From Macrostomum hystrix (taxonomy: Eukaryota; Animalia; Platyhelminthes): a DNA stretch of 64,000 bases. The stretch spans positions 14,818,001 through 14,882,000 of the forward strand of contig CATNEN010000001.1 of the NCBI GenBank assembly GCA_950097015.1. Reading direction: 5' to 3'. Position numbers and translations under genes: made by a program. How positions within the stretch are numbered: position 1 is the first letter of the stretch; every line of letters starts with the position of its first letter. Shown piece after piece: positions 5,051 through 61,899 of this stretch. A model generated the notes under the pieces. It did no database searches. It saw nothing but the letters and a program-made list of their open reading frames with translations, and was not told the DNA's origin.

Positions 5051-5157
5051 CTACTTGCATCGACCGCAGGTTTTCGAGCAAAGGCTGTGCAGTGTGGAGC
5101 ACATTTTAGATTTCTTGATGGCTTGACAATCGTTCAGCTTCAGTCGATCGTGACAAC
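5051..5157 (-). CDS. Terminal exon of the giant gene: C-terminal ShKT domain
   Basis: TTTCAG acceptor, phase 1; GCHDRLKLNDCQAIKKSKMCSTLHSLCSKTCGRCK* has the six-Cys ShKT pattern ending CxxTCGxC. Confidence 0.8.
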
Positions 5158-8100
5158 CTGAAAGTTTGAATTGGTTAAGCGATAATACATAGGCTGAGTT
5201 TCCAGCGATTCAATAGTTCCATGATTGTTGAATTATAAATCTCAGCTCAGCTTACCTTTGGCAGCGCTGACGCATTTCTCGCTTTTGGTGACTTTCTTAG
5301 CCACGCAACGGTATCCTCCGTGCTTGCTGTTGGACGAAACCGGATATGTGACGTAGTACTCAGTGCAAACCATGCGCCGACCGCATTTGCACGACGATCG
5401 GGTCTCCTTTCGCTTGGGGCACTTCGGCGAGCACTTAAACGATTCTGTGTGGGTCTGCACCACGCATTTGCCTTTGCGGCTCTTTTTCTCGGTGTACGAA
5501 GTCGTCACAGAACGCTGCCAGCCCTTTCCAGGAACATGAACACAACGGCCAACTTTGCGAGTACGGTCAAGGCCTCCGCAACCACTGCAGTCGACAATAC
5601 TAGCTCGCCTGTGAACCCTGCAATGGTCTTTGTCGCTGTGCCTGGACACAACAAGCCATGTCAGCTTGCGTTTGCCATGCTTCGAGCATCGTCCGACAAT
5701 CAATTTCGAGCCGACTGGACAGTTGACGCATCGCTTCTGGCTCTCTGACAGTCTGACGCGCCACAGGTGCATCCAATGATCGTAGTAGATGCCGCCTCGA
5801 GTGATCTTTTGCCAACCCTCCTTCGAGCAGCGACCAATCCGAAGGTGGATGAGATCAGCGTTTATCTTGTGTCTTCTGCATTGGCGGCAGCTGTGCCGGC
5901 AGAGCTGTCTGACTTTGGCGCTCTTGGAGCACTTGCCACGGTGCGCCACTTCTGTGCACCAATGCTTGGTGTCTTCACATTTGCGGCATGGCACTAGGAC
6001 GCGTTGAGTGCGTCGACGACAGCGACCGTAGTGGTGATAGTAGACGGCGACAAATGCATGACGGTAGCAGAATGGGTGTTGATGCTTGCCAAAGACTGGC
6101 CGGCAATGACACCGAGAGATTTTCAGGATGCGCCTATACGGGCAGACCAGTTTTCTGGCTTTGCAGGTCTTCTCAAACAGCAGACAGCCGGGAGTGAAAC
6201 GCAGTCCCAATGTGCCACGATGCAGACTATGATGATTTTGACGAAGGAGCTTGCAGTTGCTTGAAGCCGGGTGGTAGTCGAAGGCTCGACAGAGCGGACT
6301 AGCCTCACAGGAGCGACTGCAGGCCTCGAAAGTAGACTTCTTGGCGAGTATCAGATCAGTCTTTCCACCGATGCGGGCAGGCAGACGGGACTTGAGCTGG
6401 GAGGTGAGGCAGTGCTCTCCTGAGTAGACTATGGTTGGCTTGCTGCAGCCTGCAGGTTGATGGGTTTAAATTCCAAGAGGTCCAATGACTTAGTGTGAAC
6501 ATTGAGTGATACGAAAGCATGGCCTTTCAATGAACACTTACAATGTCCGCAGGTAGCAGCGCACAGTTGCTCAGCCAAATGTGGATGTCTCTTGCATATT
6601 TTAATGTGTTGCAAAGAGGCCCACTTCTTGCAGACCTTGCTAGGTAGTTTATCTATACACGCGGCCTTGCAATCCACAAGCTGGTTGTAGACCTTGCTCT
6701 TGCAACGGCACCGCCTTGGCAGGTAGACAGTAACGCTGACCGAGCGTTTCCCGGAGTGGCATTTTCGTCCCAGGCGAACCAGCGGCTTGCGGCACAGGAT
6801 GCGGAGCCGATTTTCTTTGCTAACCAGCCTGCAATGCCTTGAGTCGCCGTGACGCGAGCGATGTACTAGGCGGTATCGATAGATTTTCACAGACAGCAGT
6901 CGGTTGGCATGGCAACGTGTGACGCGACGTGCTCGCTTCGGACAAGCGCAGAGGCTTACGTGAGATCGGCTGGTTTGCCTATAAGAGCAGTAATGATCAA
7001 TTTTAGACGTAAATGAGTGCCATTGATACTGTACTGTGTGGCACAATCTTCCAAAACAGCTCCATTTTCGAATATCTTTATCTTTACTCTCGCACATTTT
7101 CGTGAGCTCGAATCTGCCGCGGGGGATATACTTCGTATTTACTCTTATTTGGGGTACTGCCCCAGATAGAAGGCTTGGTGGATGTTGGTGCAATCTACGA
7201 CCATGAGGGCTAACCCTCAAGGTACAGTGAGAGTGTTCACTGCCTGACAGAAAAAGTCAGGCCAGATGTACACATCAGTTGGAGTGTGTGTTCGCGGACA
7301 GTATCTGTGCGTGTGTATTCATGTGTCAGCGAAATGGGGAGAATTTGTACTATCGCCGAAAAGATCCTTACAAATATTAATAAAGTAAAACAACTTTCGA
7401 GATTTGGAGATAAGTAAAAATTCGAGCAGCATTTACCGACACTTGCAGCCATCCCTGTACTGCCACGTCACTGTAACCACTGCAAACTTTCGTCCATCAC
7501 CAGCTGCTTCTTTAGCGGCCTTGGCAGCCCGACCGTGGCCGCATCGTCCCCAGCTTCTAGTGCGACGCCGGCTGCAGGTGATTCGCTCGCGACCGACAAT
7601 CCGCTTGCGCCAGCGACAGTGGTTGTTCTGAGGATGCAGCCAGAACTCTTTGGTGACCAGAACACCGTGACTAGCTGAACATTGTGTTGACCTGCGTTTT
7701 CGTTTGATGCATCCGCATAGACGCAGGCCGCTCTTTTGAGTTTGCCTCACACAGTGACAATTGCGAACGTGCCAGCTCTGTTTGTAATAGTGTCGATAAT
7801 AGCCTGTACCATGACGCTGGCAGTGCCCCTTCAGTATGCGGCTGCCCGAGCGGCATTGAACGGCTTGTTCTGAGCGCCGGGAGATCGGACGGCAGGCCCC
7901 GTGGAGCAGCTTATGCTTAATGTGAACACGAACCCGCAAGTGCCGGTGCTTGTCACAGAAGCTGTAGTTTCGACTCGGGCGCTTGCAGCCTGTTAAAATC
8001 AACGACAAAAATATTTTTTTTGTATTTCAACAAACTTAAATTGTTGTAAAAGTAGCTCGTACGTCTAACAATAACACATACGAAAAAACTGAAAATTAAT

Positions 8101-11100
8101 TCCCACTGTTGCCACTTACAGCAAATCTCGCTCCAGGTCTTGATCTTTCTTCGGCATCGGCACCCGTGCACGCTGTACGTGATCAGACTCTGCCTTCGTT
8201 GGCAGCTGTGTCGATGGCAATGACCACGGACAAATTTGCGATTGTGTCGACAAACCACTCGACGCTTTGAACATTGTCGTCGTTTTGTACAGCCGTATGG
8301 ATGTAGCTTGTAGCCAATGCGACATCGGACCTTGTACCAGCGACCGTGCTCATCGCGACGGCATGCTCGCTGACTGCGAGACGGCGGGCAACGGCATCGG
8401 ATAGGGCGCAGGTGGCGGCGTTTTGTGCGGCATATGCATGTGTTTTGATCGACGTATCGAGTTTCAAGAACATCGCGTCGCCAGTCATCAGCATCGCATT
8501 TTCCGCGATGTCTGATAGACGCGGAACGACAGTGAGCGTACAGCGATGCGGAGATGTCGATTCGGTGGATCACGCGGCGACAGACGCTTTTATGAGCATC
8601 AAAATTATAGCTGGTTTTGATTCGGATCCGTCGTCCGTGACTGCAGATCACTCGCTCGGAGTTTTTGCCAAGGCAGCAGCACACGCGGGACTTAGTGCTA
8701 CGGGTTCGCTGGCACTTGCCAGTATGCTTGTCCCGACGCCATTCAGTGTGAGTGATCAGTCGACGGCAAGTGTCGCGCTTGCATGCGCCAACTTGTTTCT
8801 TGGGGTTTCTTTTGCAGTGCTTCTGACAGGCGCGCTCAAAGATCCGCGAGGCCGGGAAGTGGTAGCTAACAATGGAAAGTGTCAATGTATTGTATTAATG
8901 ATTTAGTCATGTCAGGTCAAAGGCTGATAATATAACTGATCAAGAAATGCATCAAGTAGTAATCAAGTAGTACGAATGCATACCATAACTCTCTATAATC
9001 CCGGAGAACATGTAACCCTAAATACTTTGTTTATTAACATATTTTGGCTAACAAAGTGCTCGCTCCGACTTACTCTCGTTTTCCTCCCATCGTGAGATAG
9101 TGTAGTCGTCTTGGCTTGCTAGCCAGCCATTTCACGTAGCGACCGTCCTTTGGTAGCGAGCCGAATCCGATGACAAACACGCGGGCCTTGCGCCTGATCT
9201 TCTCGGCGAGAGTAACTGAACTTTGACTCTCCGTGTGCTTGCCCCTGGTCACAATGAGCACGATTCTTTTCACGCCTTTCGGGTGCCTCTGGCTGCTTCG
9301 GTGCAGCTGAGCATTGATGGCTTTCAGCGCGCCATGCAGATTAGTTTTTCCGTTAGTAAAGTCGACAAACGATATCGACTTGTGCTTACCGTGCGACTTA
9401 ATATGATGTTTGTGTACCGAGGAGCTGTAGGCAAACAAGGTGGTGCGAACCTTCGACGAGCCGTACTTGAAGTGGCGTAAAACGGTTTCCAGGAATCGGG
9501 CAACGTGGCTTCGATAGCCAGAATGAGCGTCGCCACCTTTCGGCGAGTGCAAATCGACAGCGACAACCAGCTCGACAACCTTGTACTTACACGAGCAATG
9601 GCGATTGTGGAGACGCACTCTACGAACGCATCTGCAGCCTTGCTTGGCCCAATAATGCACAGCGTACTGTTGGCGCCCTTGTTTGCAACGACCGTGAATG
9701 GCGTAGCGAAGTTTTTGAGGGCAGTGCACCGGTCGGTGCGCGTCGGAGACAGAGGCGTGGCAGCGACCGTCGTGCAAGCGGTAGCTCACTGTGCGGACTC
9801 GGATAGAGCCGTGGATGCAGGAGCGACTGCGTCTTGGTGCAGGGCAGCAGCAGCGACGACCTGTCTGGTGCACCTTGGTGGATGACACACAACGGCAGGC
9901 TCGAGCGTGGAATCGCTTGATGACGACTGTGACCGCACAGCTTCCGCCACGATGGCAGCGTTTTCGCTGCTTCGAATGCGGGCAGCGAACGTGGTGCCGT
10001 CTTACACTAGTACGACGGATGCACCGACAATGCGACAAGTGCCAGCAGGTGCGTGATATTACTATCTCCTTTCCGGTCGAGCTGCATCGACGCTTCTTGA
10101 CGCACGGCTGACAGCTTAAGAAGAAATAAAAACAACTTTTAGTAGTTAAGTGACGAATAGGAATAAGTATTGATTTTCATACAGTGGTATTTACCTTGAT
10201 CGGCACGGCACCTTCTTGAACTCTCGCTTGCATAGGCAGCCGACGCGGACGGCTCTTACATAGACCTTAAAGTACAAACCCTTTTGGCTGGAGTTAAAAG
10301 CTTTATGAGAATAGCGCCATGCCTTGTGGTGACCACAGAGCACCCGACGGAACCTTCGCTTAACCGACTTAAGACAGCGCCCATGCCTGAGCTTGTAGCT
10401 TGTACGAATGTACTCTACCAGGCCACGTTTGTGATGACAGCGAGAGTATGCGCGCGGTCGCCAACACCGGCAGGTTATACAACTTCGCCGGGTCACGCGT
10501 ACGCATCGACACGCATCTCTGCGCCAGCTGATCGTCTTCTTGACGTAGTAGAAGCCATATTTTGTTGGGTGGTCGCAGCGGCTGCGGCTAACTGACTCAT
10601 ATGGGCAAACGATTGGCAGGGAGTGAACTCGAGTCTGACGGAAACAGTAGCCATCAACTAGACGCCAGTGCGTCAGCAGAATCTCATTGTTGCATTCATC
10701 ATCATCTGAGCAGCTGCAGTGTCGCCGTTTAGTTGGACGCTGGCAGCCTAATAAAAAAATTCAAAGGAAAAACCGTCAAATAAAATGTATCTAATCACGA
10801 AAGTTTTAGAAAAAACAAAGTGCAATGGCACTCACGGTATCGTTTAAAATGGGTGCGACATCGCTTTACGCAACGGCAGCCTTTGCGCACAGTCCAGCAC
10901 TTGTCGAGCTTGAGAATGCCTCCCTTGAGACGTGTACTGCGATGGGTTTCGTTGCGCTTGCACTCTGTTAAAGTTCAGAGAAACGAACAGTTTTTGTATT
11001 TAAACTGCTTCATTCCGTGTCATTGTGCCTCTAGTGTGTCTAATTGTGTGTTAGAAGGATATGTTTCAATATTTCCATAGTGAATAATATGGCAGTTACT

Positions 11101-14100
11101 CACTTATCGCACGACTAGCTTGAGAGACTTGTTTCACACACTTCCAGTTGCGCAGAACTTGCTTGACGACCGTCACCACAATTTGGCCCTCCTTGTGTCG
11201 GCACTCCTTGCTGCGCTTGAGCCCGTGGCAGCAGCATGTTCGGTGCTTGTGACTGCTTTGCCAGACGCACTCGCTGGATTTCTTATCAAGTACTTGGCGC
11301 TTGAATACTAACCGCTGGCGGCATGAGTGACGATCGCACTTGCCCACTGACAGCTTGCGGCGCGCGTGGCAACCTGTCAGGCATCGATAATAATAATAAT
11401 AACTGCAGGAGTACTGCGAACAATAGCGCATCGTTTGGTGACACTAGACCCGCAGCCAGCGAAGAGGCAATTCTGTCTATTTCGCTGACTCCCGAGTACA
11501 CACTCACACAGGTTTGTACATCTGCCCTGACTTTCTCAGCGTCAGGCAGTGTACACTCTCACTGTGCCTTGGAGTTTTGCCCTCGAGCAAACCTCCAAAC
11601 CGTATATTGCAGGAAAAGTCCACAAGTATTCTCTCCGTGGCTGCACCCTAATTTATTGTATCCTAGCCCCGCTCAGGGACCTTTGTGAGAGCAGCCAACG
11701 CGTTATCCGCTCTGCAACTCATCCCTTCCGTGAGGCATCGATTGATACAGTTAGAACTGATTGCTTCAGAATTTTATTAGCTCACCACATCGTCTTGTGT
11801 GCCTGACTACTCGCTTGTAGCACCGGCAGCTCTTCACGTACGGCTTTACAACGATAATGCTCAGACGGCCGCTGCGCTTATCGCAAATCCTTTGCTTTTG
11901 AACCCGGCCGCAGTGAACGCGTTCCCGGTGTCGTTTGACAACTACTCGGCGGCAATGACCGTTTAGGAGGCGCCGCTCAGTTACGATGGATACACGAACG
12001 AATCCCGCTAGGCAGGACAGTTTCTTAACTGGCCGAGCATCGCAGCCGCATAGATGACGCTGGATCCGTCGGCTGCGGTGGCACTTGCACCTGGAAATTG
12101 TTTTTGAACTTCTAGCTCATTTTGCGACGAGATTTATCGACACACTATTGCGATTATTCAGAGCTTCAGTGTACAACATATATAAATAAGTATATACTTT
12201 TACGAGATAAAAAACGCAACACAATAACTAAAGCATCGCTCACTTCGCAACTCGCCAGCTGGTGCAAACCTCCTTTTTGTAGAAATCGCCTTTCTTTCCA
12301 CGCTTACAATGTCCGACCTCACGAGTCTTCTTAGGACAGGTCACAGGTAACTTATTAACGCTACGCGTCACTCCACAGGCGCATTTCGAAAGTTTGTAAC
12401 TGACGCGGATAGTCAGCCAGATACGGCCGGTCTTTCCGCCGTGGCAGACGCGTTTCTCGCTGTCCTTCGGGCATCGGCAGCGGCAGCGACGCCGCTCTGT
12501 GTTCTTCAAGCATTTGCACTTTGACAATTTTTTGGTGTGAATAACAGTCAGACGGTAGCCTTCGTGATCGCAATTGTGACGTTTCACCTGACGACCGACT
12601 TTACAGGGCACCGGATGTACTTTTTGCTGCCGGTGAAGGACGCATTTAGCTTTCGGCCCTGGACTTACTAGGCGCCACTTAAGAATCGTTTTAATCCAGC
12701 TGCCATTGTTATGACATCGGGTTGAGTGCTTAGATTTCGGGCATCGACAGGGCGCTTTGGTACGGTGCGACAGTTGCCACACGCAGCGGCAGTGACGCGC
12801 GACCAAGTGGTAAAATTTGAAGGATTTCAGTCCGCTCGAGTGCTTGCACTGACCGGCTCGAATGCGAAGCTTTTTCGGACAACGGACAGCTTTGACGGTG
12901 GTTTTAAACTTCTTGACGCAGCTGTGACCGCTCTTTGCCATCCAGAATGTCCGCTTGACCAGACGGTTAGGTTCAACACATTTAACAATGTGCTTTTTAC
13001 CGCCATACTTGCGAAAGCAGTCGCAAATGCGATGCGTCACACGTTGGCTCTTGCGACAACGACAGTTCTTGGCTTTCAGGTAGACTCGTTTCACGGATTG
13101 AACGTAATCAGTCTTGGCTGTGCATTTCTTTGGTGAAACAATCCGCTGTACAAGCTGCGGATGCTTATGACAAGATAGGTGGCGCTTTTGAACTACGCGG
13201 CTTCGCTGACAGCTGTTTTTGTGCAGACGATAGGAAACACTAATTTTGAGTATTAGGTCGTCCCTGCGACACACGGTCCGATGGTACGGCTTAGGACAAC
13301 GGCAACGTCGCTTCCGCCTTTCCACAACGACCTTGATGCATTTCTTCACTAGCTTATTTGTTCCAGGGATCTTAACTCCCGTGTTTTTCAGGTGATATCC
13401 TAACCAGATGTCGTGAGCAAACCTGCGACCACACTTTCCTGGCTTGTGAATAAGAGTGTGCGGACAAGAGCATCTCTGCTTGCGAACAATGGTACGCTTC
13501 TGGCAATGGCAGGCGACGGCAAAGTGTCTGGTCTTGCGAATTTGGCGGAACCCATCCTTGCCGCACTTTGACACGCGATACTGAGGCTTTTTGCGGCCAC
13601 AGTGCACTCGGCGACTGCGGGTTACGCGCCGGCGATGACAACGATGATCTCGGAGTTCATAGCTGCTGGTGACGGCAACGATAAGGTGTCGCTTGGCGTC
13701 GCAGCTGTGCTTGGTAATGGGACCGGGGCAGCAGCAGCGAAGATTTTTGGTGGCGACTTTGTGAGCAACACAGCCACACTTAGCTAGCCGATAGGCATAC
13801 TGTTGGACAGTGAAAGAGCATTTGTGACACTTGCTCTTTTTAGAGAATTTGCCCGGACATGACAGATGCTCATCCCTAATATGCTGCTTTCCACGACAAT
13901 ATCCTTTTCCATGAACCGGCTGGTAGCTAGTAAGGATCTGACGACGAGTCTTGTCGTGAACGCATTGTTTGGTTCGATGCGATGGCCGACAGTGACAAAC
14001 GTGTTTATGCTTGCTTGCCAAACGCCAGGTGCATCCGCAGTGACCGTTGCTTTGACGACGCAGGACATGAGTGACTGAATATTTGTCGCCTTTGTGGTTC

Positions 14101-20100: not shown

Positions 20101-23100
20101 GTCGATCCTGACACCCACTCACTTTCCGATAACGGTCTTTGGCTTTGCATGGCACCTCCAATGCCGCACGAGGCGCAGATGAGTGACGCGCACGCAGCGC
20201 CATTGTTTGAGGTGCAGGCGCGAAGTTTTCGCATAGATTGCACTGTGCCGACAGAAGCGTCGACGCTTGGTCTTGTCGGGACAGCAGCAGACGCGTTGTT
20301 TCCCAGTGAACTTGCTGACTTTCTGACAGCGGCATCCACGGACAATGTAGCTAATCTCGCGTTGTCGACTCAGGCAAGACTTTTTCCGATCGCAGGCAAG
20401 CCAGATCAGCTGGCGATGCTTGGTGCATTCCACCCGGTCGGTCACACGCCGAAGCCATTTCTTGCAGCCGCATTTCTTGCCGCGTAGAACACGGTAACCA
20501 ACGGTGGCTTGCTGCCATGCGGTGCCTGATTTGACGCAGCGTTTTTTATGCCGCACAGTCTTCGAACAGCAGCATGGACAGGCGCGTCGCTTCACGACCG
20601 CGTAGTAACATGAGCAGCGCTTCTTGTCCAGTTTCTGCTTCATCGTGTAAATGTAGCGCTTTCGGCAGCCGGTTTTGTAGCATGGCGTGTACCGGTGCTT
20701 AATATCGCTTCGACAAGCAACGCGTCTCAGTTGTCGCTTCACCCGCTTGTAGCATCGACCGTGACGCAGAGCAAATGTCAATGTCTCGGTCACCCAGGCT
20801 CCGGCGTGGCAGAAATGCCTTCGACTGCCGGCCGGACAACGACAGCGCAGCCGACGAGTCACGTGACGAACTGTCCGGCATTGCTTCTTAGCTGAGTCCC
20901 AGCGTCTAATCTTGGTAACAATTCTACGCGTGTAGCCTCGCTTCGGACACTTGTAGCGACGAGTGATTGACTTGCAATCTGCGGGAAATTCATGATGCCA
21001 TTTTACACGCTGTTTGCATCTGCGGTGCTTTCGGAATTTTATTATTTTAATGACTCTTTAGAAATGCGTAGAAAAGTGAGGCACAAACTTACGGCAATTT
21101 CGTTTCTTTTTGATGCTTCGCTTCAAACACTTGCAACCTTTACGAATATGGTAGACCTTGGTCTCAACATAGAACTTGTTCCCAATGCACTTCGTGACGC
21201 TGTAGTGAGTCTTTTGACTGCAAGCTGTCAATTTTAATATGGGTTGCAATTCAAACATCAAATGACCAATGAATAAATGTGCCACGAATAAAAGCAGACA
21301 AATTCTCTACTTACAGACACGGTGACTCTTTTTAGTTGTCCGCTTAATGCACCGCTCCTTCTTATGGCTCCATCGTTGAGTGGTCAGCTCGGAGACCACC
21401 AATCCTTCGTCTTTGCGGCAGTATCGTTTCCGACTGGGTTCGGTGTGCGGACAGCCGCATTTTCGTGACTTCTTTTTCACAGCCCTGACACAGGAGCAGT
21501 TTCGCTTCACTGAGTAGTGCGTCACTGTGATTTGAATGCGCCTGCGTTCATCACAAGCGTGCTTCTGTGTGTAGGGCGCCGGGCAGGTGTAGCTTCTGTA
21601 ACGAGTTTTGCTTTTGCGAACGCAATGACCTTTCTTTAACACGTAGCGATAAGTGACTGTCGCTTTACGGTTGCTCGAATGATCGCAGAACTGCCTGCGA
21701 TGATGCTTGGCCGCATGGTTCTCGTGATCGCAGTCTGCGGGAATGAGTTTTAGAAATGGCTAATCAGGTTAGTAGTTTTTCCGGCATTAGAACACCTTGA
21801 TGCGATATAAGAGACAGTTATTATGATTATTTGCTCGACCTAGTAATAAATTTGATAGACTAAGAAACTTACAATAAAAATAATTGCAGGAGGGCTGTGG
21901 GCAATGGTACATCATTTAGTGACACTAGACCCGCAGCCAACCAGGAGGCAATTCGTCAGTGTGTCCCATTTCGCTGACTCCTGAGCACACACGCACACAG
22001 ATGCTGTACGCAGGCACACGCTCACACAGGTGTGTACATCTGCCCTGACTTTCTAATCGTCAGGCAGTGTATACTTTACTGGGCCTTGGAGGTTGGTCCT
22101 CAAGGGCGTAAATTGCCCCCAAGCCTTCTCTCCGCGGCTGCGCCCCAAATGAATGTGGCCTCGCCGCGGAATCGAACTTAGGGACCTTGGCGCGAGAGGC
22201 AAACGCGTTAACCGGTCTGCCACCGACCCCCCGACTAAGAAACTTACTGCATCGCAGGCGATTGTGCAGAGACCACACTCGCGCGCAGTGACAGCCCTTT
22301 GGCTTCAACACGCCAATGTAGATGGACTTCACGCCCGATTTGGCGCGACAAACATACTTTCGCCGGACGCTATGCGAACAATGCACGCGAGTGACCTTGA
22401 TGCGGTGTCGTTTAATGCACTTTCCTGACTTCAACAACCAGAAGGTTGTGCGCTGGATGTAGGCGTTTCTTTCGCTGTCACACTGACGCTTGCCAACCAC
22501 CGGTTTAGGACACTCTGGAAACATTGTTATTGGAGGCTTTAACAGGTATTTCAGAACCAGAACCTCCAAAAGCTATTAATATCCTTTTGAACCAATATGG
22601 ATTTGCCATATAGGTTTACACTGAGCAATGTTAATTGTCCTTGTCTCCAGGACCTTCGACAAGAATCGCTGAACACCTCGACGATGCGGAATCGGAAAGC
22701 TTTAAAAGTTCATCCTAAAGGTTGAAAAATTTGATAGAGATGGTGGACTTTCACGAAAATCGGTCATTCGGTTTGTGAGATGTCGTGAAGTAGGCAGTGT
22801 GTATTTGAAATTAATGGTCTTTCCGCAGGGGGAAAATAACGTGCCTTTCTACTGCTAATGAAGACTGATAACATAAAAACAAGTTTCTTTTTTAGAAAAA
22901 TGTATAATAACGAGTTGTCCAGGGATTCTTGTACTCACTGCAACGCAGATGTTTAACTCTCTTCCTTTGTACACACTTGCAACCCTTGCGCTTCCATCTG
23001 GTTACAGTGGTCGTGAGCACTCCTGACTTGCCGTCGCAGTGCCTCTGATGCTCCGCCCTGCGACAGTGCACCGGTGATCGGGACTCCCTGACGCGTTGAA

Positions 23101-26100
23101 TACAGGTGCGGCAACCGTGTAGCTTCCAGCTGACGTGTCGAGTGACCCACTCGCCCGTGTGAACATTGCAGTGTCGGCTCTTTTTCGATGGTTGACAATG
23201 TTTTCGACATTTGCGCCTGACAACGGTTTTTGAGCAGCGGCAGTTTCGGACATGCCAGTGGTAGGTGGCCAAGTAGTAGTATCCGGACTTCGGATGAGGC
23301 AGCCGTTTTGTTACAGACTTGCCCTGCAGATTGTGCGGACATCTGACCCTAACCTTGGAGATGCGGCTCAGTCTCTGGCACTCGCGCTGGTCCTTGCTGA
23401 GCTGCGTGTAAGTCACCCGGCGCATCGAATACTTCTGTGAGCGGCACCAGCGTTTAACTCGACGTTTACCCGGACAGCAGCATCGGAACTGCTGTCGCTT
23501 GAACACCTTGAAATAAATAGCGCAACATTAAAGAGCTCAAATATTTCGTTCCGCAAGTCTGGACAATAATTTGGGAAATTAATTTTACCTTGGCGTGACA
23601 ATGTTGGTCTTTGTGGCGCCCTTCTCCCTTCCGCTTGGCAAAGTAAAAGTAGGTCTTCGTATAGTGACACTCTGGGCCGCAGTGCTTGCCTCCGCTGCAG
23701 CCAGTCTTTGGACACTCGGTGGTCTTCACGAAGCTACCCCGACGGCAGCCGCACAGCTCCTTGACGGTGCGCCGGACTCGGACGCAGCTGCAGCTGCCCG
23801 GTTTTTTGCGATAGAATTCAAAGCGCACCTTGCGGAATCGAGATATGCCACGACGACCGATGTGACTGCAGGGACCGACATGACGCAACACGCCATGCTT
23901 GCAATCTGGACGGTGGATCAAGGATGAACGGTGTTATCGTTTTATAGTCTGATCTGAAAATAAAATCTGTGTGAAAAATGTTTGACTCACGAAGCCGAGC
24001 AACTTTTCTAGTCCGTCTCTTAATGCAATCGTCGCCTTTTAGAATGTACCAAACCTTGGTCGAGATCTTGGAGCCCGTGACATGGTCGCAGCGCACGCTT
24101 CTGCTTGCCTTCGGACAGGCGACGCGGAACTTTCGAGTGAAGACCTTTCGATGGCATTGGTGCTTCTCGAGTCTGTACTGAACTCGAATTAGCTTCTTCC
24201 AGTAGCGGTCCAGCCGAACTGTTTTCTTGTAGCCAGATGGACAACCTTTGAATGGGAATGATGACAAATACACATTCAATGCCATTATCTATTTCAATTT
24301 AGATAAAAAAACTACTTACAACACTTTCCAATATGTCGCTTAGCAATCTTCTTGACACACTTGCATTCTTCGAGTTTGTGATACGTTGAAACTTTCACTG
24401 CGCTGCAGGTATTTTTATTGCAGACTATTCTTGCCCGGTGATTGCGAGAGCACTTGACCTTTTGCTTGTCCTTTCGCTCCCAGCGGACGCATTTTAGGTC
24501 TTTCAAACGCAGACCGGACGTAATCGTGATCTGATATTCGCCAGAAATCGAGCAAAGCCGCTTTGAGCGCCGCTTCTTGCTGCAGGAACACCGAAGCTTT
24601 TGAACCTTCTCTAGGCGGAGCCGGCACTTGCAGTGACTGGCGTACCTCACGAACACTTTACGCTTCCTGTACTTGCTACCCGGATGGCACTTGCCCAGAA
24701 CTGTACTCTGACCAGAACAGTCTGGCAATTGTTGGTTGACATGATCATACTTAGGATTGGGAAAACGAAAACATGCTAATGGCATTACCAAAAAGTTATT
24801 TTTTTGTTACACCACGCAGGGAGAGGCGCCACACCCACCCTAAACTAACCGAGCTACTGCTGGAGATCATTTAACAGCTAGTTAGACTAAAGTAATATAA
24901 AGCTGTGCGTCTTTAAAGGACAAAACTTTCTCAATATTCGAATCCCTGACCTTCGATTAGTGAGTCCGCTTAAATTAATGAGATGTCGAGAAAAAACTCA
25001 CGAATCTTTTTAATAACTGTTCGCCGAGTTATTCTAACACACTTTGAGCAGTGCTTAGCCGGCTGGAATACCTTCGTGACTTTGATCAGGACGCTATGCC
25101 TCTCGCACTTTTTGTAGCTGACCGCCTTCTCGTAGCCCGGAGGTGGGCAATGGCATTTTCTGCTGACGCTGACAACTCTCTGAAGGCAGCGGTGCAGGCC
25201 GTGACGCTCTCGGCGCTGCTCAGTCCGCTTGCCAGAGCGAATGCCGGTGCAGTAGTTGCAGTAGTGGAACACTGTCTTAGCTTTGTCCGGACAAGCTGCG
25301 GAGAAAGTCACCCAATGAACTCGAATAAATTGTCTTTGATTTCGAATAAAAAACTGACCAGAATGTGTGCTTACATCCGCATGGCTCATAGTGCCGCAGG
25401 GTGCTCTTGACACATCTACCGTGCGGTCCCGGCAGCCAACGAATCGACGTCACTGAGCGGTTCTTGTAGCGACTGGAGCACTTGGAGACGACTCGACGAT
25501 TTGCTGGACAACCTGGCGAGACATCGAAGACGAGAAAGAAATAATAGACAGCTGCGATTGTTTATATTGATTTAATTGAGGAGGGCTGTGGGCGCAAGTG
25601 TACATCTGCCCCTGAGTTTCTTCTGATTGGTGTAAATTTTACGACTAGCCTCCGAGCCTTCTCTCCGCGGCTGCGCCTCAAATGAATGCGGCCTCGCTGC
25701 AGATTCGAGCTTTGCTACTTATCCTCTAGGATAAGGGAGTGAGTTGCAGAGCGGTTAACGTGTTCGCCAGAGCTCGATTCTTCGGTGAGGCCACATTAAA
25801 TTGGGGCGCAGCCGCGGAGAGAAGGCTTGGGGGTTTTCGTGAAATTTACGCCCTTGAGGGCCAACCTCCAAGGCACAGTGAAAGTGTACACTGCCTGACG
25901 ATGAGAAAGTCAGGGCAGATGTACACACCTGTATGAGTGTATGCCTGCGTACAGTATCTGTATGCGTGTGTGCTCAGGAGTCAGCGAAACGGGCAGAATT
26001 GCCTCCTCGCTGGCTGCAGGTCTTACTTACTTTGCAGGGGGCCTGGGGCACTTGACGCACAAACACAGAACGGCATGCCCCCAGGCCGGCGAACTAGGCG

Positions 26101-29100
26101 AGAGCCGCCCATCGCGCCGCCTCCCCTGAGCAGGCACCTCACACACACAGTAGCAAGCCAAGCGGGGAAGGGGGCGGCAGCCGGAGTGCCTCTCTCCCCA
26201 GGCCCGCACACGCACAGAGCAGACCAAGCCGGGGCGGAAGGCTGATAGAAATCAGTCCTCAGGGGGGGGGGCGGGTGACGAGTGTACACTTTATCCAATC
26301 GCGCTGACGGAAATCCAGATGAGCGCGCGGCGGTGTACACCCGCCCCCCAGCCACCCCCCGCAAGGTCTAACGCCCCAGCGCCAACGCACACAACTCACA
26401 CAACGCAGAACAGGCACACAGAAAGTAGGAGCGAAGCTATTTTTCAAGCTTTGATTGCACGAAATATGGTGCACCTCCGCCGGTCGCTACTGTCCAAACC
26501 CCCCCAACAAGTACCGAAATTAATCGTGACCTGAAGGGTGAATCGAACTAGCGTCCTTTGGAGTGCGAGGCAGCGACGTTAGCCGCTGACCCCCCTCGCC
26601 CCTTGGCTGCAGGTCTAGTGTCACCAAATTATATGCCATTGCCCGCAGCCCTCCTGAAATTAACATTATTATTATTATGCCCTAGAATAATGGGTAGCAT
26701 CGAATACTCACGGCACTTGTTGACACCGCAAGCAGCGGAGCACACTGCTCTGTAGAATTTCTTCGCGCATTTGCCTTTCCGCTTCAGTTTCAGGCACAGT
26801 TCGTCTCTGAACTGGTTCTGGCCACACTTGGGCCGGCAATGACCACAGGTCAGTCGGCAGAACTTGGCCATGGCTTCCGGATAGCGTTTGCACCTGCCAT
26901 GCGCCCGCCAGCGGAGGCACTTGCTGCGCGGCATTCGGTCTAGGCAGAGCTTTTTAAGACACTTGCACTGTTTCGGCCGCACACAATGGTTGGCTTCATC
27001 CAGAACGAACCCGGAGTCGCAACGGCAGCCCTCGGCGCTGGGCAGGTGGAAGCAGCGTTTGGGCACGCCGAAGAAATGACTGCCGCAGGTGTCAGGACAG
27101 GGGCTGGCGTTGCTGGAGAAGCTCTGATTCGGACCGCACTTCAGGGCTACGGATGGGTTCAAAGGCGAATGTTTTGTACCAGAGTCACGTGCTTGGTAAA
27201 CAATGTTTCCATTCTGCTGTAAGATGCCGTTACTTCGTTAATGCTGCTCCAAAATGATCATTCTGTGAGCAGTTTCTCATTTATATCCCATGACCCTTCT
27301 GTGAGGTTGAAGAAGGGCGAGGGGGCGAGTGGATCAGCGGCTAGCGTCGCTGCCTTGCACTCCAATGGACGCTAGTTCGATTCTCCCTTCAAGTCACGAT
27401 TAATTTCGGGACTTGTTGGAGGGTTTGGACAGTAGCGACGGCGAAGGTGCACCATATTTCGTGCAATCAAAGCTTGAAATAATAGCTTCGCTCCTACCTT
27501 CTGTGTGCCTGTTCTGCGTTGTGTGAGTTGCGTGCGTTGGCGCTGGGGCGTGAGGCCTTGCGGGGGGTGGCTGGGGGGCGGGTGTACACCGCCGCGCGCT
27601 CATCTGGATTTCCGTCAGCGCGATTGGATAAGTGTACACTCATCACCCCCTGAGGACTGATTTTTTATCAGCCTGTGCGTGTGGGGCTGGGGTGGGGGGG
27701 CACTGCTGCCTATTCTGGGTGCCCTCCCCGGCTGGTCTGTGCTGCTGTGTGTGGTGCCTGCTCAGGGGAGGCGGCGCGATGGGCGCTAAGCGCCTAGTTC
27801 GCCGGTCTGGGGGCGTGCCGCTCCGTTGCTTGTGCGACAAGTGCCCGGGCCCCCCTGCAAATAGATAGATAGAGAGAGGATGAAGAAGTTGAAGTTTGTG
27901 AACTCTTCAGATACCTGAGTATTCCCAGTGCTACGCAATGCAATGCCAAATAACAATGGGGCAGAGAAATTCTTACGACAGCCGCTATTTTTCCGCCAGG
28001 CCAGAGGTCGGTGATGCTTCGCGCATCTCCGGGACTGCAGGTAGAAATTGGCGCAAAGAATTTTTCTGCGCAATCCGTCGACTTTGTGGGCGGCGCAGGC
28101 GTCATCGATGCAAGGCTGCAGAACTTCGCCATCGTTGCAACCGTGGCCATCCCGATGCGGATCCTTGATGACTCGCTGACAAGCGTTAACAGCCTCTTGT
28201 TTAGCTTCGGGGCTCTGACAGCTGCTGCCCGAATGATCACTGTGGCAACCGGCGTTTGAAAGCCAATCATCGGGATCGTCATGTCGCTGTCCGTCACAGT
28301 TGCCAGCCAGACCAGCTACCTTGCCGCGGTATTCAGCTCCTAGCCGGTAGGTGGCGGTCCATTTGCCATCGAATGCCAGCCAGAAGTTGCAGCGCTTGTG
28401 CACCAGAACTACGTCCTCTCCGGAATAGAAGACGCGGATACCGTGGTCGACGCCGTAAGGTATCGACTTGGAGTGGCCGTTCACCTGGCGGTGGACAGTT
28501 TCGTTGAGCGGTCTAAGTTTGAACTGTCTAATAACTGTACTTGTAAGAATAATTGATTACACCTGCCCCAATTGGGCCAGATGTTCAGCCGACAGCACAG
28601 CCGCAGCTATTGCGCGGCGTGTCTGAAGGCTGCGTACGGCTGTTCAGTCCATGGACTGGGTGATGCCACACCCAATTACCCCAACAAATGCTAGTACCCA
28701 TTTAACAGCTGGGTGAACTGAAGCAATGCAGAGATAAGTGTCTTGCTTATGCACACATTTTGTTCCAATGGATCCGGGTATCGAACCCTAGACCTTTTCC
28801 CAGACAATTTTGTGCTGCACCCGAACGGAGCAACGCAAGCGCACGAAACTCAGGAACACAGGCCAAATTTTGTTGCACATCTTCTGAAACAATAATCGAG
28901 TCGCCAGCTCTTCAGGCCGTCGAGATATTCAACGGTTCTGGCCTAGGTTCTGATGTTTCCCATAAGCGCTAGTGTATTTCATACACCCCTATACAGCAAT
29001 TAGCACAGCGCCTCTGTGCGGCTTTGTCAGGCCTTCACAATTTATGTCACCCGAATGTGCCTGCATCATCTCCGTCTTCGGTGATCACCTACCTTTATCT

Positions 29101-30256
29101 AGACGGACTTCGAGGACTACAAAAGGTGAAACTAGGCCACTATGGACACCCTGACTCAGTCACCACCCAACTCTGTTAGCATTCGGGCGCTGCCAAAAAA
29201 TTCAGGGTTTAAAAAAAAGGCGGCACAAAGGCTTGGTAGTCCTACTGTTTAGTCGTGAGTCCTACCCTCGAACCACAAGGCTAAAACCTCCGCTTCAGCC
29301 CTCAAAACAGAACAACGAGTTTCTAAAAAGCAAGCATTATCAGTTATTTGTGGCCTCACCGTGAGACGCCTGCCAATCAGCAGGCTGTACTCCTTGCCGT
29401 CGACCTTCACGCTAAGGCTGCTCAATTTCGACAAGCCCAGCTTTCGATGGCCGACTGCTTTGAATGAGGCCAGAATGTCGAATTTGCATTCGCCCGAGGA
29501 TCTGGTGAGCACGAGCTGCCGGCCCAGGCAGCCACCGCCGGCCGGATCCGCTGCCAGACTGCCGCCGTCAAACTGGTACACATGACCTCTGGCTCCGCCA
29601 ACGCTTGCGTAGCAGTCTGCACAGTGTGGGGAGTTGGATGGCCTGCATCAGTCACTGCCTGCCTACACATTTTACTCGTGTACCTGCCTACTCCACTGTC
29701 TACTCACTCTACTCCACTGTCTACCCAATCTACTCTATCGTCTACCCAATCAACTCTATTGTCTACCCAATCTACTCTATTGTCTATTTAACCTACTGTA
29801 CTGTCCACTCAATCAACTCAACTATCTACCGAACCTACTCAACTGTCTACCCAATCTACTCTACTGTCTACCCAATCTACTCTACTGTCTACCCAATCTA
29901 CTCAACTTTCTACCCGATCCGATCCAATCTATTGTCAACCCAATCTACTCTCGTGTCTACCCAATCTACTCTATTGTCTACCCAATATACTCTACTATCT
30001 GCCTACTATACTTAAATGCGTACCCAATCTACTGTACTGTCTATGTACTCGTAATTTACTCTTCTCTCTGACTAGTACTGTCTAATGTCTACCTACTCCA
30101 CTCCTTCACTCCTTCGCCTAAATCTACTCAATTTCCGACGCCACCAAATGTCTCACCGTGAGCAGTCACGCGGGCCGCCGAGAGTCCGAGCAGAATGATC
30201 AGCCAGAATGGAGCCGCAATCGAGAAAAAAATTTTCGGCGCTGCCATCGGCTTCAT
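5051..30256 (-). CDS. Giant secreted Cys/Arg/Lys/His-rich mucin-like protein (SP-vWD-C8-TIL-ShKT2-[Cys-rich cationic modules]n-vWA-modules-ShKT-PAN-ShKT-modules-ShKT), about 5,482 aa, 34 exons
   Basis: Exons read by eye with GT/AG ends and consistent phases: 30256-30157, 29616-29360, 28484-27977, 27146-26712, 25512-25375, 25295-25002, 24721-24320, 24245-23991, 23905-23589, 23506-22939, 22514-22248, 21734-21315, 21224-21093, 20978-20123, 20018-19099, 19009-18725, 18147-18010, 17886-16965, 16842-16535, 16270-15625, 15505-15276, 15148-14633, 14559-14257, 14140-12244, 12090-11786, 11373-11104, 10964-10836, 10747-10195, 10114-9074, 8865-8120, 7989-7437, 6978-6542, 6449-5256, 5157-5051. Sum is 16,449 nt (divisible by 3). 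Starts MKPMAAPKIFFSIAAPFWLIILLGLSAARVTAH (signal peptide) and ends ...CSKTCGRCK*. Confidence 0.85.
6165..6420 (-). CDS. PAN/apple domain (in exon 33 of the giant gene, upstream of the listed 5242..6210 ORF start)
   Basis: In-frame translation gives HCL...STFEACSRSCEASPLCRAFDYHPASSNCKLL...LLFEKTC, the PAN signature C-x3-C...C-R-A-F-D-Y...C-x-L. Confidence 0.75.
7100..7335 (+). mobile_element. Diverged SINE family A copy (intron 31 of the giant gene)
   Basis: Degenerate match to the family (GAAGGCTTGG, CACTGCCTGAC.GAAAAAGTCAGG.CAGATGTACACA). Confidence 0.6.
9074..9590 (-). CDS. vWA domain with degenerate MIDAS (part of exon 29 of the giant gene)
   Basis: ELVVAVDLHS...FLETVLRHFKYGSSKVRTTLFAYS...GKTNLHGALKAI...VKRIVLIVTRGKH...AEKIRRKARVFVIGFG...LASKP matches the vWA strand/helix pattern. 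DxSxS and TDG are replaced by DLHSP and TRG. Confidence 0.85.
11387..11720 (-). mobile_element. SINE family A copy; tail abuts the exon 26 acceptor
   Basis: (AAT)n tail at 11387-11402, body TTTGGTGACACTAGACCCGCAGCCAGCG...GTCAGGCAGTGTACACT. Confidence 0.72.
18300..18530 (+). mobile_element. Old diverged SINE family A copy
   Basis: GTCCCTGAGCTCGAATCCGCAGCGAGGC...GCAGCCGC...AAAGTCAGGGCAGAT...GTGTGCTCAGGAGTCAG. Confidence 0.5.
21873..22232 (-). mobile_element. SINE family A, full length, with 15-bp TSD
   Basis: tRNA-like head GGGGTCGGTGGCAGACCGGTTAACGCG...GTTCGATTCC. TSD GACTAAGAAACTTAC at 21858-21872 and 22233-22247. Confidence 0.88.
25572..25712 (-). mobile_element. Internally deleted SINE family A copy
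   Basis: GAGGGCTGTGGGC...GTACATCTGCCC...GCCTTCTCTCCGCGGCTGCGCC.CAAATGAATG; inverted relative to the adjacent copy at 25742. Confidence 0.65.
25742..26672 (+). mobile_element. SINE family A copy split by a family B insertion
   Basis: 5' part 25742-26023 and 3' part 26604-26672 (CTAGTGTCACCAAA...ATTATTATT) rejoin across the duplicated TGGCTGCAGGTCT. Confidence 0.82.
26024..26603 (-). mobile_element. SINE family B (tRNA-derived, about 580 bp), nested in SINE A, 13-bp TSD
   Basis: Head GGGGCGAG...GGTCAGCGGCTAACGTCG...GTTCGATTC, tail (AGTA)n, TSD TGGCTGCAGGTCT at 26011-26023 and 26604-26616. Confidence 0.85.
26712..27146 (-). CDS. TIL + two ShKT domains (exon 4 of the giant gene)
   Basis: CGPNQSFSSNASPCPDTC...EGCRCDSGFVLDEANHCVRPKQC is TIL. 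CLDRMPRSKCLRWRAHGRC...MAKFCRLTCGHC is ShKT, followed by a second ShKT-like unit ending VCSAACG. Confidence 0.88.
27316..27875 (+). mobile_element. SINE family B copy
   Basis: Reverse-complement homolog of 26024-26603, with B-box GTTCGATTC and (ATAG)n tail. Imperfect TSD GAGGTTGAAGAAG (27303-27315) / GAGGATGAAGAAG (27876-27888). Confidence 0.83.
27977..29616 (-). CDS. vWD + C8-like domain exons (exons 2-3 of the giant gene)
   Basis: DCYASVGGARGHVYQFDG (vWD start, C..G..HY.TFDG-like); FWLAFDGKWTATYRLGAEYRGKVAGLAGNCDGQRHDD (vWD GLCGNFDG..DD motif); PCIDDAC...LCANFYLQSRRC...WRKNSGC (C8-like). Confidence 0.85.
28555..28800 (-). mobile_element. CORE-like SINE (family C) copy
   Basis: Minus strand reads GGTTCGATACC...GCAAGACACTT...CAGTTCACCCAGCTGTTAAATGGGTAC. 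Related fragments occur near 16345-16465, 24850-24960 and 35905-36030. Confidence 0.6.
29685..30060. repeat. 21-bp minisatellite (CTACTCTACTGTCTACCCAAT) in intron 1 of the giant gene
   Basis: Direct tandem copies; they generate the YSTVYPI and LLYCLPN pseudo-ORFs. Confidence 0.9.
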
Positions 30257-30369
30257 TCTCGTTGGAGGCGAGAAGAATAGCCTATTGAACTAGCAGAGTT
30301 TGAGGATTGGGGAAGTCGTGCTTTAGTTCCACTGTCCGTTTCAATTGCTAGACAGATACCTGGCACTTT

Positions 30370-30410
30370 ACTGTCGAGTCCAACAGAGCAGGATCAAGTA
30401 GTTTATATAA
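30370..30410 (-). promoter_or_regulatory. TATA box and initiator-like element of the giant gene
   Basis: Minus-strand TATATAAA at 30409-30402, with ACAGT (Inr-like) about 30 nt downstream near 30374-30370, about 115 nt upstream of the ATG at 30256. Confidence 0.55.
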
Positions 30411-34272: not shown

Positions 34273-34439
34273 GCCTGAAATGTTTAATGTTTAACTGAAA
34301 CAAATGAAGAATTGAAAATCGATTCATTCATTGTAATACACTAAAAACGAAAATAGGATTACGAAATGACTAAATCGGTAGCACAAAAGCCTAAATCTGT
34401 TCGTGGTCCGCACAAAAATCTACCCAGTTAGCTAGAAGA

Positions 34440-61646: not shown

Positions 61647-61899
61647 CTGGTTGATGAAATGAAATGACTAATTTCTAGGAAGCTGAAATGGAAAGACGAA
61701 TTAAGAGTTTCCTTATTGAACCTTTCGCAAGGGCTGCAATTGCCATAGACATCTTGCGTACGTAACGTACCACTAGCCTTCGTGATGATATTCATTGGTT
61801 ATTTTATGAAATACACAAGCTTACACAAAATTAAAAAAACGTCCATAAACACTTGGCCACACTGGCGGTCCCCACTGGCGGGTAAATGTTGTACATAGC

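What the first reader, a model, noticed from the sequence alone, without database searches (positions are those of the whole stretch)
5051..30256. Giant (~5,480 aa) secreted polycationic, disulfide-rich mucin-like protein: candidate undescribed flatworm glue, coat or rhabdite protein
Seen: dozens of fragmentary ORFs join into one 34-exon frame with consistent phases, a signal peptide and a TATA promoter. The N-terminus has the vWD-C8-TIL assembly of gel-forming mucins and vWF. In place of a Ser/Thr PTS core it has roughly 4,500 aa of Cys/Arg/Lys/His-rich modules with few acidic residues, plus vWA, PAN and five ShKT domains. Established: vWD-C8-TIL drives disulfide multimerisation, and large Lys/Arg-rich vWD proteins act in flatworm temporary adhesion (Macrostomum Mlig-ap1/ap2). 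Inference: this is a polymerising cationic secretion (adhesive, rhabdite/mucus, egg-case or antimicrobial coat) with an architecture I do not recognise from described adhesins.
Basis: partly seen in the sequence, partly recalled or inferred. Interest (0 to 1): 0.92.

Follow-up and report, generated by a model that had tools for sequence, protein, structure and literature searches.

The report
Giant positively charged secreted flatworm protein
This Macrostomum flatworm has one real, expressed gene for a secreted protein of about 5,500 residues, built mostly from some 40 copies of an unnamed cysteine-rich, strongly positive module; uncharacterised relatives occur across flatworms, parasites included, so it is probably a structural matrix or secretion protein rather than the known glue.

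Summary
On the minus strand, from ATG 30256 to the stop at 5051, lies one multi-exon gene. My model has 34 exons and 5,539 codons. Spliced RNA contigs confirm the first six introns and the start of the seventh. They join the signal peptide, VWD, TIL and ShKT exons to the cationic core.

Pfam finds VWD (second half only), TIL, VWA, PAN and three ShKT matches. C8 is not detected.

About 78% of the core consists of a 93-residue unit with 8 conserved cysteines, about 39 unit equivalents. The unit has no Pfam, PDB-sequence or fold match, although its predicted model is confident (pLDDT 93.5).

Composition: Cys 9.4%, Lys+Arg 26%, His 6.6%, Asp+Glu 4.5%, net charge about +1,190.

It is neither Mlig-ap1 nor Mlig-ap2, and it is not a mucin: it has no PTS region and no cystine-knot end.

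It belongs to an uncharacterised flatworm family with members in Macrostomum lignano, Echinostoma, Echinococcus, Sparganum and Cichlidogyrus. Those parasite members weaken the glue or rhabdite reading.

Most likely it is a disulfide-locked polycationic extracellular scaffold. Its tissue and function are untested.

The scan noted this same stretch once before (s1-848293).

The parts
30403..30409 (-). TATATAA, candidate TATA box about 150 nt upstream of the ATG
   Evidence: Sequence read. RNA contigs reach at least 30300. Function not tested.
30157..30256 (-). Exon 1: ATG and signal-peptide-like N-terminus (MKPMAAPKIFFSIAAPFWLIILLGLSAARVTAH)
   Evidence: RNA joint 29616|30157 in three runs. Translation. 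The signal peptide is judged by eye; no predictor was run.
29360..29616 (-). Exon 2: presumed first half of the VWD domain (..GHVYQFDG..)
   Evidence: RNA contigs join it to exons 1 and 3. There is no significant Pfam or pairwise match, so the assignment rests on position only.
27977..28484 (-). Exon 3: second half of VWD (about 28275-28478) followed by a C8-like eight-cysteine stretch
   Evidence: Pfam VWD 23.8-27.3 bits. PDB phmmer hit to FCGBP 8rde, E 4.5e-9, with a weak collinear C8 alignment. 27% identical to P0005 residues 161-352 and 46% to M. lignano Mlig022069.
26712..27146 (-). Exon 4: TIL (about 26965-27138), ShKT (about 26836-26940) and a second ShKT-like stretch (about 26713-26826)
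   Evidence: Pfam TIL 35.6 bits and ShK 20.5-21.9 bits. RNA joints on both sides. 43% identical to P0005 residues 354-496.
24320..25512 (-). Exons 5-7 (25512-25375, 25295-25002, 24721-24320): first cationic Cys-rich units
   Evidence: RNA joints 25510|26710 (cut +2), 25295|25375 and 24721|25002. Unit-HMM hits.
10195..24245 (-). Exons 8-28 (predicted): core of tandem 93-residue units. Coordinates: 24245-23991, 23905-23589, 23506-22939, 22424-22248, 21734-21315, 21224-21093, 20978-20123, 20018-19099, 19009-18725, 18147-18010, 17886-16965, 16842-16535, 16270-15625, 15505-15276, 15148-14633, 14559-14257, 14140-12244, 12090-11786, 11373-11104, 10964-10836, 10747-10195
   Evidence: Stop-free Cys/K/R/H-rich pieces. 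Splice-site dynamic programming with consistent phases. Exons 15-25 are collinear with M. lignano A0A1I8GF89. Not RNA-verified here.
12244..14140 (-). Exon 24, the largest exon (631 codons, seven units); used as the query for the homology searches
9074..10114 (-). Exon 29: two and a half units, then the VWA domain (about 9097-9507)
   Evidence: One stop-free piece holds both. Pfam VWA 41.6 bits. Aligns with the VWA regions of the Echinococcus and Echinostoma relatives.
6542..8865 (-). Exons 30-32 (8865-8120, 7989-7437, 7239-6542; predicted): further units, ending in a ShKT-like stretch (about 6542-6665) whose sixth Cys codon is completed by exon 33
   Evidence: The T|GC codon across the predicted junction restores the ShKT cysteine pattern.
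5256..6449 (-). Exon 33: PAN/apple (about 6163-6360), ShKT (about 5878-5982) and a Cys-rich tail
   Evidence: Pfam PAN_1 34.6 bits and ShK 17.6 bits. 27% identical over 395 residues to the C-terminus of M. lignano A0A1I8GF89, E 3.5e-24; E 1e-13 to the Sparganum relative.
5051..5157 (-). Exon 34: C-terminal ShKT and stop codon (5053-5051). The acceptor is 5157, or alternatively 5193.
   Evidence: Pfam ShK 19.5 bits, below the cut-off of 20.9. The two dynamic-programming runs choose different acceptors.
25513..26711 (.). Large intron 4, holding interspersed repeats. The same applies to introns 27147-27976 and 28485-29359.
   Evidence: Contig depth of hundreds to thousands with many variants, against 5-8 on the exons.

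Best explanation
This is one transcribed gene for a secreted protein of about 5,500 residues. It belongs to a flatworm-restricted, uncharacterised family.

Layout: signal peptide; one VWD-(C8)-TIL assembly of the FCGBP/zonadhesin type; two ShKT-like domains; about 39 unit equivalents of a 93-residue all-beta unit; a VWA domain set among the units; then ShKT, PAN, ShKT, a Cys-rich tail and a final ShKT.

Each unit has two three-stranded sub-domains, 8 conserved cysteines and an optional fifth cysteine pair.

Inferred mechanism:
- The chain folds in the secretory pathway into a long string of small, disulfide-locked beta modules.
- The N-terminal D assembly links chains by disulfides.
- The surface charge (net about +1,190, with 6.6% His) lets the chain bind and condense polyanions such as sulfated or acidic glycans and anionic surfaces. 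The protein would then serve as a cohesive extracellular scaffold.

The extreme charge is specific to the macrostomid members, so I favour an externally deployed secretion or matrix in this worm.

Shown: gene structure at the 5' end, expression, domains, composition and family.
Inferred: multimerisation, polyanion binding and site of action.
For: - One gene: spliced RNA contigs join exons 1-7, and phases are consistent over 34 exons.
- Comparative support: P0005, a relative read as one uninterrupted 4,171-residue frame on a 12.9 kb contig, has the same order from signal peptide to C-terminal ShKT-PAN. M. lignano A0A1I8GF89 is collinear with exons 15-33.
- Domains. The D assembly of P0005 matches FCGBP, zonadhesin, otogelin, hemocytin and SCO-spondin, and exon 3 hits FCGBP 8rde.
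- Unit: 49 HMM hits cover 78% of the core. Cysteines are invariant. The AlphaFold2 model has pLDDT 93.5 and six strands. Paired presence or absence of two extra cysteines is 10/1/0/10, Fisher p 3e-5.
- Charge and composition.
- Family: 26 hits in an exhaustive HMMER search; every named one is a flatworm protein, and the relatives scanned also carry a VWA domain.
Against: - No tissue or cell-type data, so where the protein acts is unknown.
- Exons 8-34 are predicted only.
- There is a single D assembly and no C-terminal dimerising cystine knot, so polymerisation is not assured.
- The first half of VWD and the C8 are not recognisable in the window gene.
- The GDPH motif present in P0005 is absent here.
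- Parasite relatives are only mildly basic, with pI 8.7-9.3. Charge-based binding therefore cannot be the family's common function.
Confidence: 0.5

Rival explanations
1. It is an internal extracellular-matrix or basement-membrane protein shared by all flatworms, a long modular fibre comparable in role to fibrillin, hemicentin or SCO-spondin. It would not be an external secretion.
For: The architecture (units, VWA, ShKT-PAN tail) is conserved in cestodes, a trematode and a monogenean. VWA and PAN are typical matrix-interaction domains.
Against: The charge is several-fold higher in the macrostomid members, which suggests a lineage-specific use. Several paralogues exist in this genome, so functions may have diverged. 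No localisation data are available.
Confidence: 0.25
2. It is a component of an adhesive secretion, either the duo-gland organs or the cement glands, acting as a cationic cohesive partner like Mlig-ap1.
For: It is polycationic, Cys-rich and carries a VWD/TIL assembly, as ap1 does. Its size is similar to ap1's 5,407 residues.
Against: It has no C-type lectin, EGF, LDLa or TSP-1 domains and no ap1/ap2 repeat peptides. The ten adhesive-organ transcripts found in the M. lignano screens all belong to ap1 or ap2, and double RNAi removes the adhesive vesicles (PMC6410801). Relatives occur in parasites that lack such organs.
Confidence: 0.1
3. It is an antimicrobial coat, or a polyprotein cut into cationic, disulfide-stabilised beta-hairpin peptides.
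For: Each roughly 45-residue sub-domain is a cationic, disulfide-braced beta sheet. Net charge is about +1,190.
Against: There are no conserved processing sites between units: the linkers vary and are often only 'C-x-C-P'. Interaction domains at both ends (VWD/TIL, VWA, PAN) fit an intact scaffold.
Confidence: 0.07
4. It is not one functional gene: several genes, a pseudogene, or an artefact of repeats.
For: Exons 8-34 rest on prediction. The large 5' introns hold repeats.
Against: There are no stops in about 5,500 codons across 34 in-phase exons. Spliced RNA covers exons 1-7. Full-length homologues are collinear. The units are diverged, with mean column identity 28%, yet keep every cysteine.
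Confidence: 0.03

Closest known systems
Uncharacterised flatworm proteins: M. lignano A0A1I8GF89 / PAA50356.1 (3,733-3,945 aa), M. lignano Mlig022069 models (PAA78532.1 and others), Echinostoma caproni A0A183ADW1, Echinococcus granulosus W6UV63 ('Collagen alpha-3(VI) chain'), Sparganum proliferum BHF74423.1, Cichlidogyrus casuarinus KAL3320257/8
   Same: They share the 93-residue cysteine unit in tandem. Relatives scanned also have an embedded VWA. Some have the C-terminal PAN/ShKT tail, and some have the N-terminal VWD-TIL-ShKT head.
   Different: Identity is only 25-46%. The window protein is longer and far more basic and His-rich than the parasite members: net +1,194 against +131 to +188. 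None has a described function, and no paper in the library cites their accession numbers.
Mlig-ap1, the cohesive glue protein of Macrostomum lignano (GenBank MH586844; PMC6410801)
   Same: Giant (5,407 aa), secreted, very Lys/Arg-rich, with a vWD-C8-TIL assembly and a high cysteine content in its domain region.
   Different: The cationic parts of ap1 are low-complexity GRK/SRK repeats at both ends. Its core has a C-type lectin and 17 EGF modules. Here the cationic part is made of folded 8-Cys units, and there is no lectin, no EGF and no ap1 epitope repeat.
IgGFc-binding protein / zonadhesin / otogelin / hemocytin / SCO-spondin D assemblies
   Same: The N-terminal VWD-(C8)-TIL block is homologous.
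   Different: Those proteins carry many D assemblies. This one has a single assembly, lacks the GDPH motif, and spends about 85% of its length on an unrelated unit.
Midkine / pleiotrophin (basic, heparin-binding, two small disulfide-braced beta domains)
   Same: This is an analogy only. One unit has two three-stranded beta sub-domains with 8-10 cysteines and a high positive charge. Pleiotrophin appears among the weak fold hits.
   Different: There is no significant fold or sequence match: Foldseek probability 0.23, VIA Z 3.3 at rank 47, and no Pfam PTN_MK hit. The cysteine spacing also differs.

Membership tests
Gel-forming mucin / vWF type polymer | Several N-terminal VWD-C8-TIL assemblies | tested here: not met
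   Only one VWD and one TIL match in all the stop-free pieces of the gene.
Gel-forming mucin / vWF type polymer | Central Pro/Thr/Ser-rich O-glycosylated region | tested here: not met
   S+T is 12.5% overall. The core is made of Cys/K/R/H-rich folded units.
Gel-forming mucin / vWF type polymer | C-terminal cystine-knot (CTCK) dimerisation domain | tested here: not met
   No cystine-knot family is matched. The C-terminus is a ShKT-like domain.
Macrostomum adhesion protein 1 (ap1) | C-type lectin + vWD-C8-TIL + EGF array, flanked by GRK/SRK low-complexity repeats | tested here: not met
   No lectin or EGF hit. The repeat peptides used as ap1 epitopes occur 0 times. Definition taken from PMC6410801 and PMC8621496.
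Macrostomum adhesion protein 2 (ap2) | LDL-receptor domain, TSP-1 repeats, 221/255-residue repeat arrays | tested here: not met
   No LDLa or TSP-1 hit. The repeat here is a 93-residue Cys unit. The ap2 epitope peptides occur 0 times.
Unnamed flatworm family of giant unit-VWA-PAN-ShKT proteins | Tandem 93-residue units with 8 conserved cysteines | tested here: met
   49 HMM hits in the window gene. The relatives are matched over many stretches.
Unnamed flatworm family of giant unit-VWA-PAN-ShKT proteins | VWA domain embedded among the units | tested here: met
   The window gene has VWA in exon 29. P0017 and P0002 also have a VWA. Exon 29 aligns across the VWA regions of P0015 and P0002.
Unnamed flatworm family of giant unit-VWA-PAN-ShKT proteins | C-terminal PAN/ShKT/Cys-rich tail | tested here: met
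   Exon 33 against the C-termini of P0001/P0027, E about 4e-23, and against P0017, E 1e-13.
Unnamed flatworm family of giant unit-VWA-PAN-ShKT proteins | N-terminal signal peptide, VWD-C8-TIL and two ShKT | tested here: met
   Exons 3 and 4 match P0005 residues 161-496 and the M. lignano Mlig022069 models. This head is not seen in the Echinococcus model at E 1e-4.
FCGBP/zonadhesin-type D assembly | Complete VWD, C8 and TIL in order | tested here: inconclusive
   The second half of VWD and the TIL are met. C8 and the first half of VWD are not detected in the window gene. They are clear in the relative P0005.
Midkine/pleiotrophin-like heparin-binding fold | Significant fold or profile similarity of the unit | tested here: not met
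   Best Foldseek E is 0.096 (an unrelated protein), and pleiotrophin has probability 0.23. The best VIA Z is 4.3, with pleiotrophin at Z 3.3. There is no Pfam or PDB profile hit.

The most novel reading that the evidence does not exclude
The 93-residue unit is a new extracellular domain type restricted to flatworms. In free-living macrostomids, the supercharged, His-rich version forms a charge- or pH-switchable secreted material. It could, for example, be the so far molecularly unknown matrix of rhabdites or mucus rods, condensed with acidic glycans in the granule and released on discharge.
Probability: 0.15. Interest if true: 0.8.

Novelty: new variant of a known kind. Interest (0 to 1): 0.55.

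Why it matters
This would be a third kind of giant cationic secreted protein in Macrostomum, beside the two known glue proteins. Unlike them, its positive charge sits on folded, disulfide-locked modules rather than on low-complexity repeats.

The module is not catalogued in Pfam and has no match among solved structures, although its predicted structure is confident. It defines a protein family that runs through free-living and parasitic flatworms, including Echinococcus, where one member is misnamed as a collagen.

Localising and knocking down this gene would show whether flatworms have an undescribed structural polymer. The unit itself could be of interest as a compact polyanion-binding scaffold.

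Tried and rejected
- **Same gene as Mlig-ap1 or ap2:** rejected on architecture and on the absence of their repeat peptides.
- **Other described flatworm adhesion proteins** (Minona ap3-5 and ao1; Theama ap3, krg1 and others): different builds.
- **First dynamic-programming exon model:** it rewarded introns and was wrong.
- **Length-maximising model:** it over-called non-coding frames in the 5' introns, which the RNA contradicts.
- **Composition-based model:** it dropped the VWA and PAN exons. I therefore used a hybrid model.
- **ESM Atlas:** no usable lead; best score 0.76, to a viral cluster.
- **Fold searches of the unit:** nothing above noise.
- **Profile of the unit against PDB sequences and Pfam:** nothing.
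- **Exon 2 against the VWD of P0005:** score no better than shuffles.
- **Literature searches by accession numbers and by domain words:** no paper on the family.
- **Earlier findings searched by words:** nothing relevant.
- **Tool limits:** P0015 was too long for the Pfam scan, and P0027 was too long for the own-genome search.
- **Two-unit alignment (A2):** not folded, because the tool returns no shape measure that would show a rod.
Full report
**What is in the sequence**

All long Cys/Lys/Arg/His-rich stop-free stretches between 30289 and 5054 lie on the minus strand. The first has an ATG at 30256 followed by a hydrophobic, signal-peptide-like N-terminus. The last ends ...CSKTCGRCK, with the stop at 5053-5051. 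Earlier notes of this scan name the genome as a Macrostomum flatworm. The assembly has 220 Mb in 42 contigs, and the window is C1:14818001-14882000.

**Is it one transcribed gene?**

I laid the contigs of public runs on 24301-30300, the part with the longest introns, where the N-terminal domains must join the cationic core.

- Three runs of one study give contigs at depth 5-8 that cover only the exons. Unique intron sequence has almost no coverage, so these libraries are RNA.
- The contigs skip 29617-30156, 28485-29359, 27147-27976, 25513-26711, 25296-25374 and 24722-25001.
- Every skip has CT..AC on the plus strand, that is GT..AG on the minus strand.
- Contigs continue beyond a donor at about 24319.
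- Exons 1-7 are therefore 30256-30157, 29616-29360, 28484-27977, 27146-26712, 25512-25375, 25295-25002 and 24721-24320. They stay in frame, and six of these seven introns are in phase 1 (the seventh by its donor only).

For the rest I combined two dynamic-programming models with the Pfam evidence. This gives a 34-exon model of 16,617 nt, or 5,539 codons, with consistent phases and no stop. Those exons are predictions, but three things support them:

- Exons 15-33 map collinearly onto an annotated M. lignano protein, and neighbouring exons land on adjoining residues.
- Exons 3 and 4 match P0005, a relative read as one uninterrupted 4,171-residue frame on a 12.9 kb contig. P0005 has the same overall order from signal peptide to C-terminal tail.
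- The predicted exon 32/33 junction completes the sixth cysteine codon of a ShKT pattern.

All searches used single exons or stop-free pieces by reference. Whole-protein figures are sums over the exon peptides.

**Domains**

Pfam results:

| Domain | Where | Score |
|---|---|---|
| VWD, second half only | exon 3 | 23.8-27.3 bits (cut-off 22.9) |
| TIL | exon 4 | 34-36 bits |
| ShK | exon 4 | 20.5-21.9 bits (cut-off 20.9) |
| VWA | exon 29, in the same open frame as repeat units | 41 bits |
| PAN_1 | exon 33 | 35 bits |
| ShK | exon 33 | 17.5 bits |
| ShK | last exon | 19.5 bits |

- Two further ShKT-like six-cysteine stretches are visible by pattern only, one in exon 4 and one at the end of exon 32.
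- C8 is not detected. Only a weak collinear alignment to the C8 of FCGBP exists.
- Exon 2, which should hold the first half of VWD, matches nothing.
- The homologous region of P0005 is a clear D assembly, related to FCGBP, zonadhesin, otogelin, hemocytin and SCO-spondin. The assignment for the window gene is therefore sound but divergent.

**The core**

- An HMM iterated on the exon peptides finds 49 hits to a 93-residue unit. These cover 78% of exons 5-32, about 39 unit equivalents.
- The unit has eight conserved cysteines, in the pattern C...CxC...CxCP...C...C...C. It falls into two halves of about 45 residues, and exon borders lie at either half.
- Two further cysteines occur together or not at all: one shortly after the first cysteine, and the middle one of 'CCC'. 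The counts are 10/1/0/10, Fisher p 3e-5. I read this as an optional fifth disulfide.
- The units are old. Mean column identity is 28%, yet the cysteines are invariant.
- AlphaFold2 on 30 units gives a confident all-beta model, pLDDT 93.5, with two three-stranded sub-domains.
- Nothing known matches the unit. Foldseek finds nothing below E 0.096. VIA-align against 48,161 chains gives at best Z 4.3, which is generic beta-meander similarity. Pleiotrophin appears only at noise level.
- Pfam scans of all 30 units and a profile search of PDB sequences find nothing.

**Composition**

Summed over the exon peptides: Cys 9.4%, Lys 11.7%, Arg 14.5%, His 6.6%, Asp+Glu 4.5%, Ser+Thr 12.5%, net charge +1,194, and 519 cysteines. 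There is no Ser/Thr-rich region.

**Relatives**

An exhaustive HMMER search of 1.84 billion representatives with exon 24 gives only 26 hits.

- Every hit that carries an organism name is a flatworm protein. They are several M. lignano proteins, and proteins of Echinostoma caproni, Echinococcus granulosus (named 'Collagen alpha-3(VI) chain'), Sparganum proliferum and Cichlidogyrus casuarinus.
- They share more than the unit. Relatives scanned have the embedded VWA. Some have the PAN/ShKT tail, and some have the VWD-TIL-ShKT head.
- Identity is low, 25-46%. The window protein itself is not in the libraries.
- This genome has paralogues on C27 (44% identity), C39, C38 and C11.
- The parasite members are only mildly basic, with pI 8.7-9.3. 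The macrostomid and the two Logan members are strongly basic.
- No paper in the library cites any of the accession numbers.

**Comparison with the known glue**

- Mlig-ap1 (5,407 aa) has low-complexity Lys/Arg repeats at both ends. Its core has a C-type lectin, vWD-C8-TIL and 17 EGF modules.
- Mlig-ap2 has LDL and TSP-1 domains and 221/255-residue repeats (PMC6410801, PMC8621496).
- None of these features is present here, and their repeat peptides are absent.
- The adhesion proteins of Minona and Theama are also built differently.
- In M. lignano, all ten adhesive-organ transcripts found in the screens belong to ap1 or ap2. Double knock-down abolishes the adhesive vesicles.
- Together with the relatives in parasites that lack duo-gland organs and rhabdites, this makes the glue reading unlikely. 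The rhabdite reading stays unsupported but is not excluded for this paralogue.

**Most likely mechanism (inferred)**

The protein is probably a long string of about 80 small, disulfide-locked beta sub-domains. The chains would be linked through the N-terminal D assembly, with VWA and PAN as protein or glycan contacts. The very positive, His-rich surface would bind and condense polyanions, giving a cohesive extracellular scaffold. Whether it is released to the outside or built into internal matrix cannot be decided from sequence.

**Limits**

- Only one 6 kb stretch could be checked with reads.
- No signal-peptide predictor was available.

Noticed in passing
window 25513-26711, 27147-27976, 28485-29359: The three large 5' introns hold interspersed repeats. 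RNA-run contigs pile up there at depths of hundreds to thousands with many variants, against 5-8 on the exons, so these are probably transcribed transposable-element families.
   Followed up: no
G000:C27:1-2832 and C27:16479-20783 (L002, L003): A paralogue 43-44% identical to exon 24 occurs twice in inverted orientation on a small contig. Each copy has one TAA inside the match, which could be an intron or a break.
   Followed up: partly
P0033/P0034 (M. lignano Mlig022069 g3, g2): In these public gene models the VWD-TIL-ShKT block sits at the C-terminal end, after about 1,600 residues of units. That is the reverse of the order in the window gene and in P0005. It may reflect a fusion of tandem genes in the annotation or a real rearrangement.
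   Followed up: no
P0038 (M. lignano A0A1I8HBY8, 180 aa): A fragment in the same 90% cluster as a unit-bearing protein is labelled 'CTCK domain-containing' by its source. Pfam finds no cystine-knot family in the 30 units scanned here, so the label may be a weak profile hit on the unit's cysteine pattern.
   Followed up: partly
P0017 (Sparganum proliferum BHF74423.1) residues 3555-3689: This relative ends in a lysine methyltransferase domain (Methyltransf_16, E 2.5e-13), most likely a gene-model fusion with a neighbouring gene.
   Followed up: no
window 34400-37300, 47800-50600, 52400-54400, 60900-61700: Long tandem-repeat tracts give open frames in several frames and strong GC-skew swings. A kinesin-motor-like motif (..DLAGSERQ..) lies on the minus strand at about 51170-52120.
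   Followed up: no
P0005 residues about 75-85: The relative P0005 has the GDPH motif at the start of its VWD (..YGDPHYKTFDG..), the site of autocatalytic cleavage in FCGBP and some mucins. The window gene has ..GHVYQFDG.. instead.
   Followed up: partly
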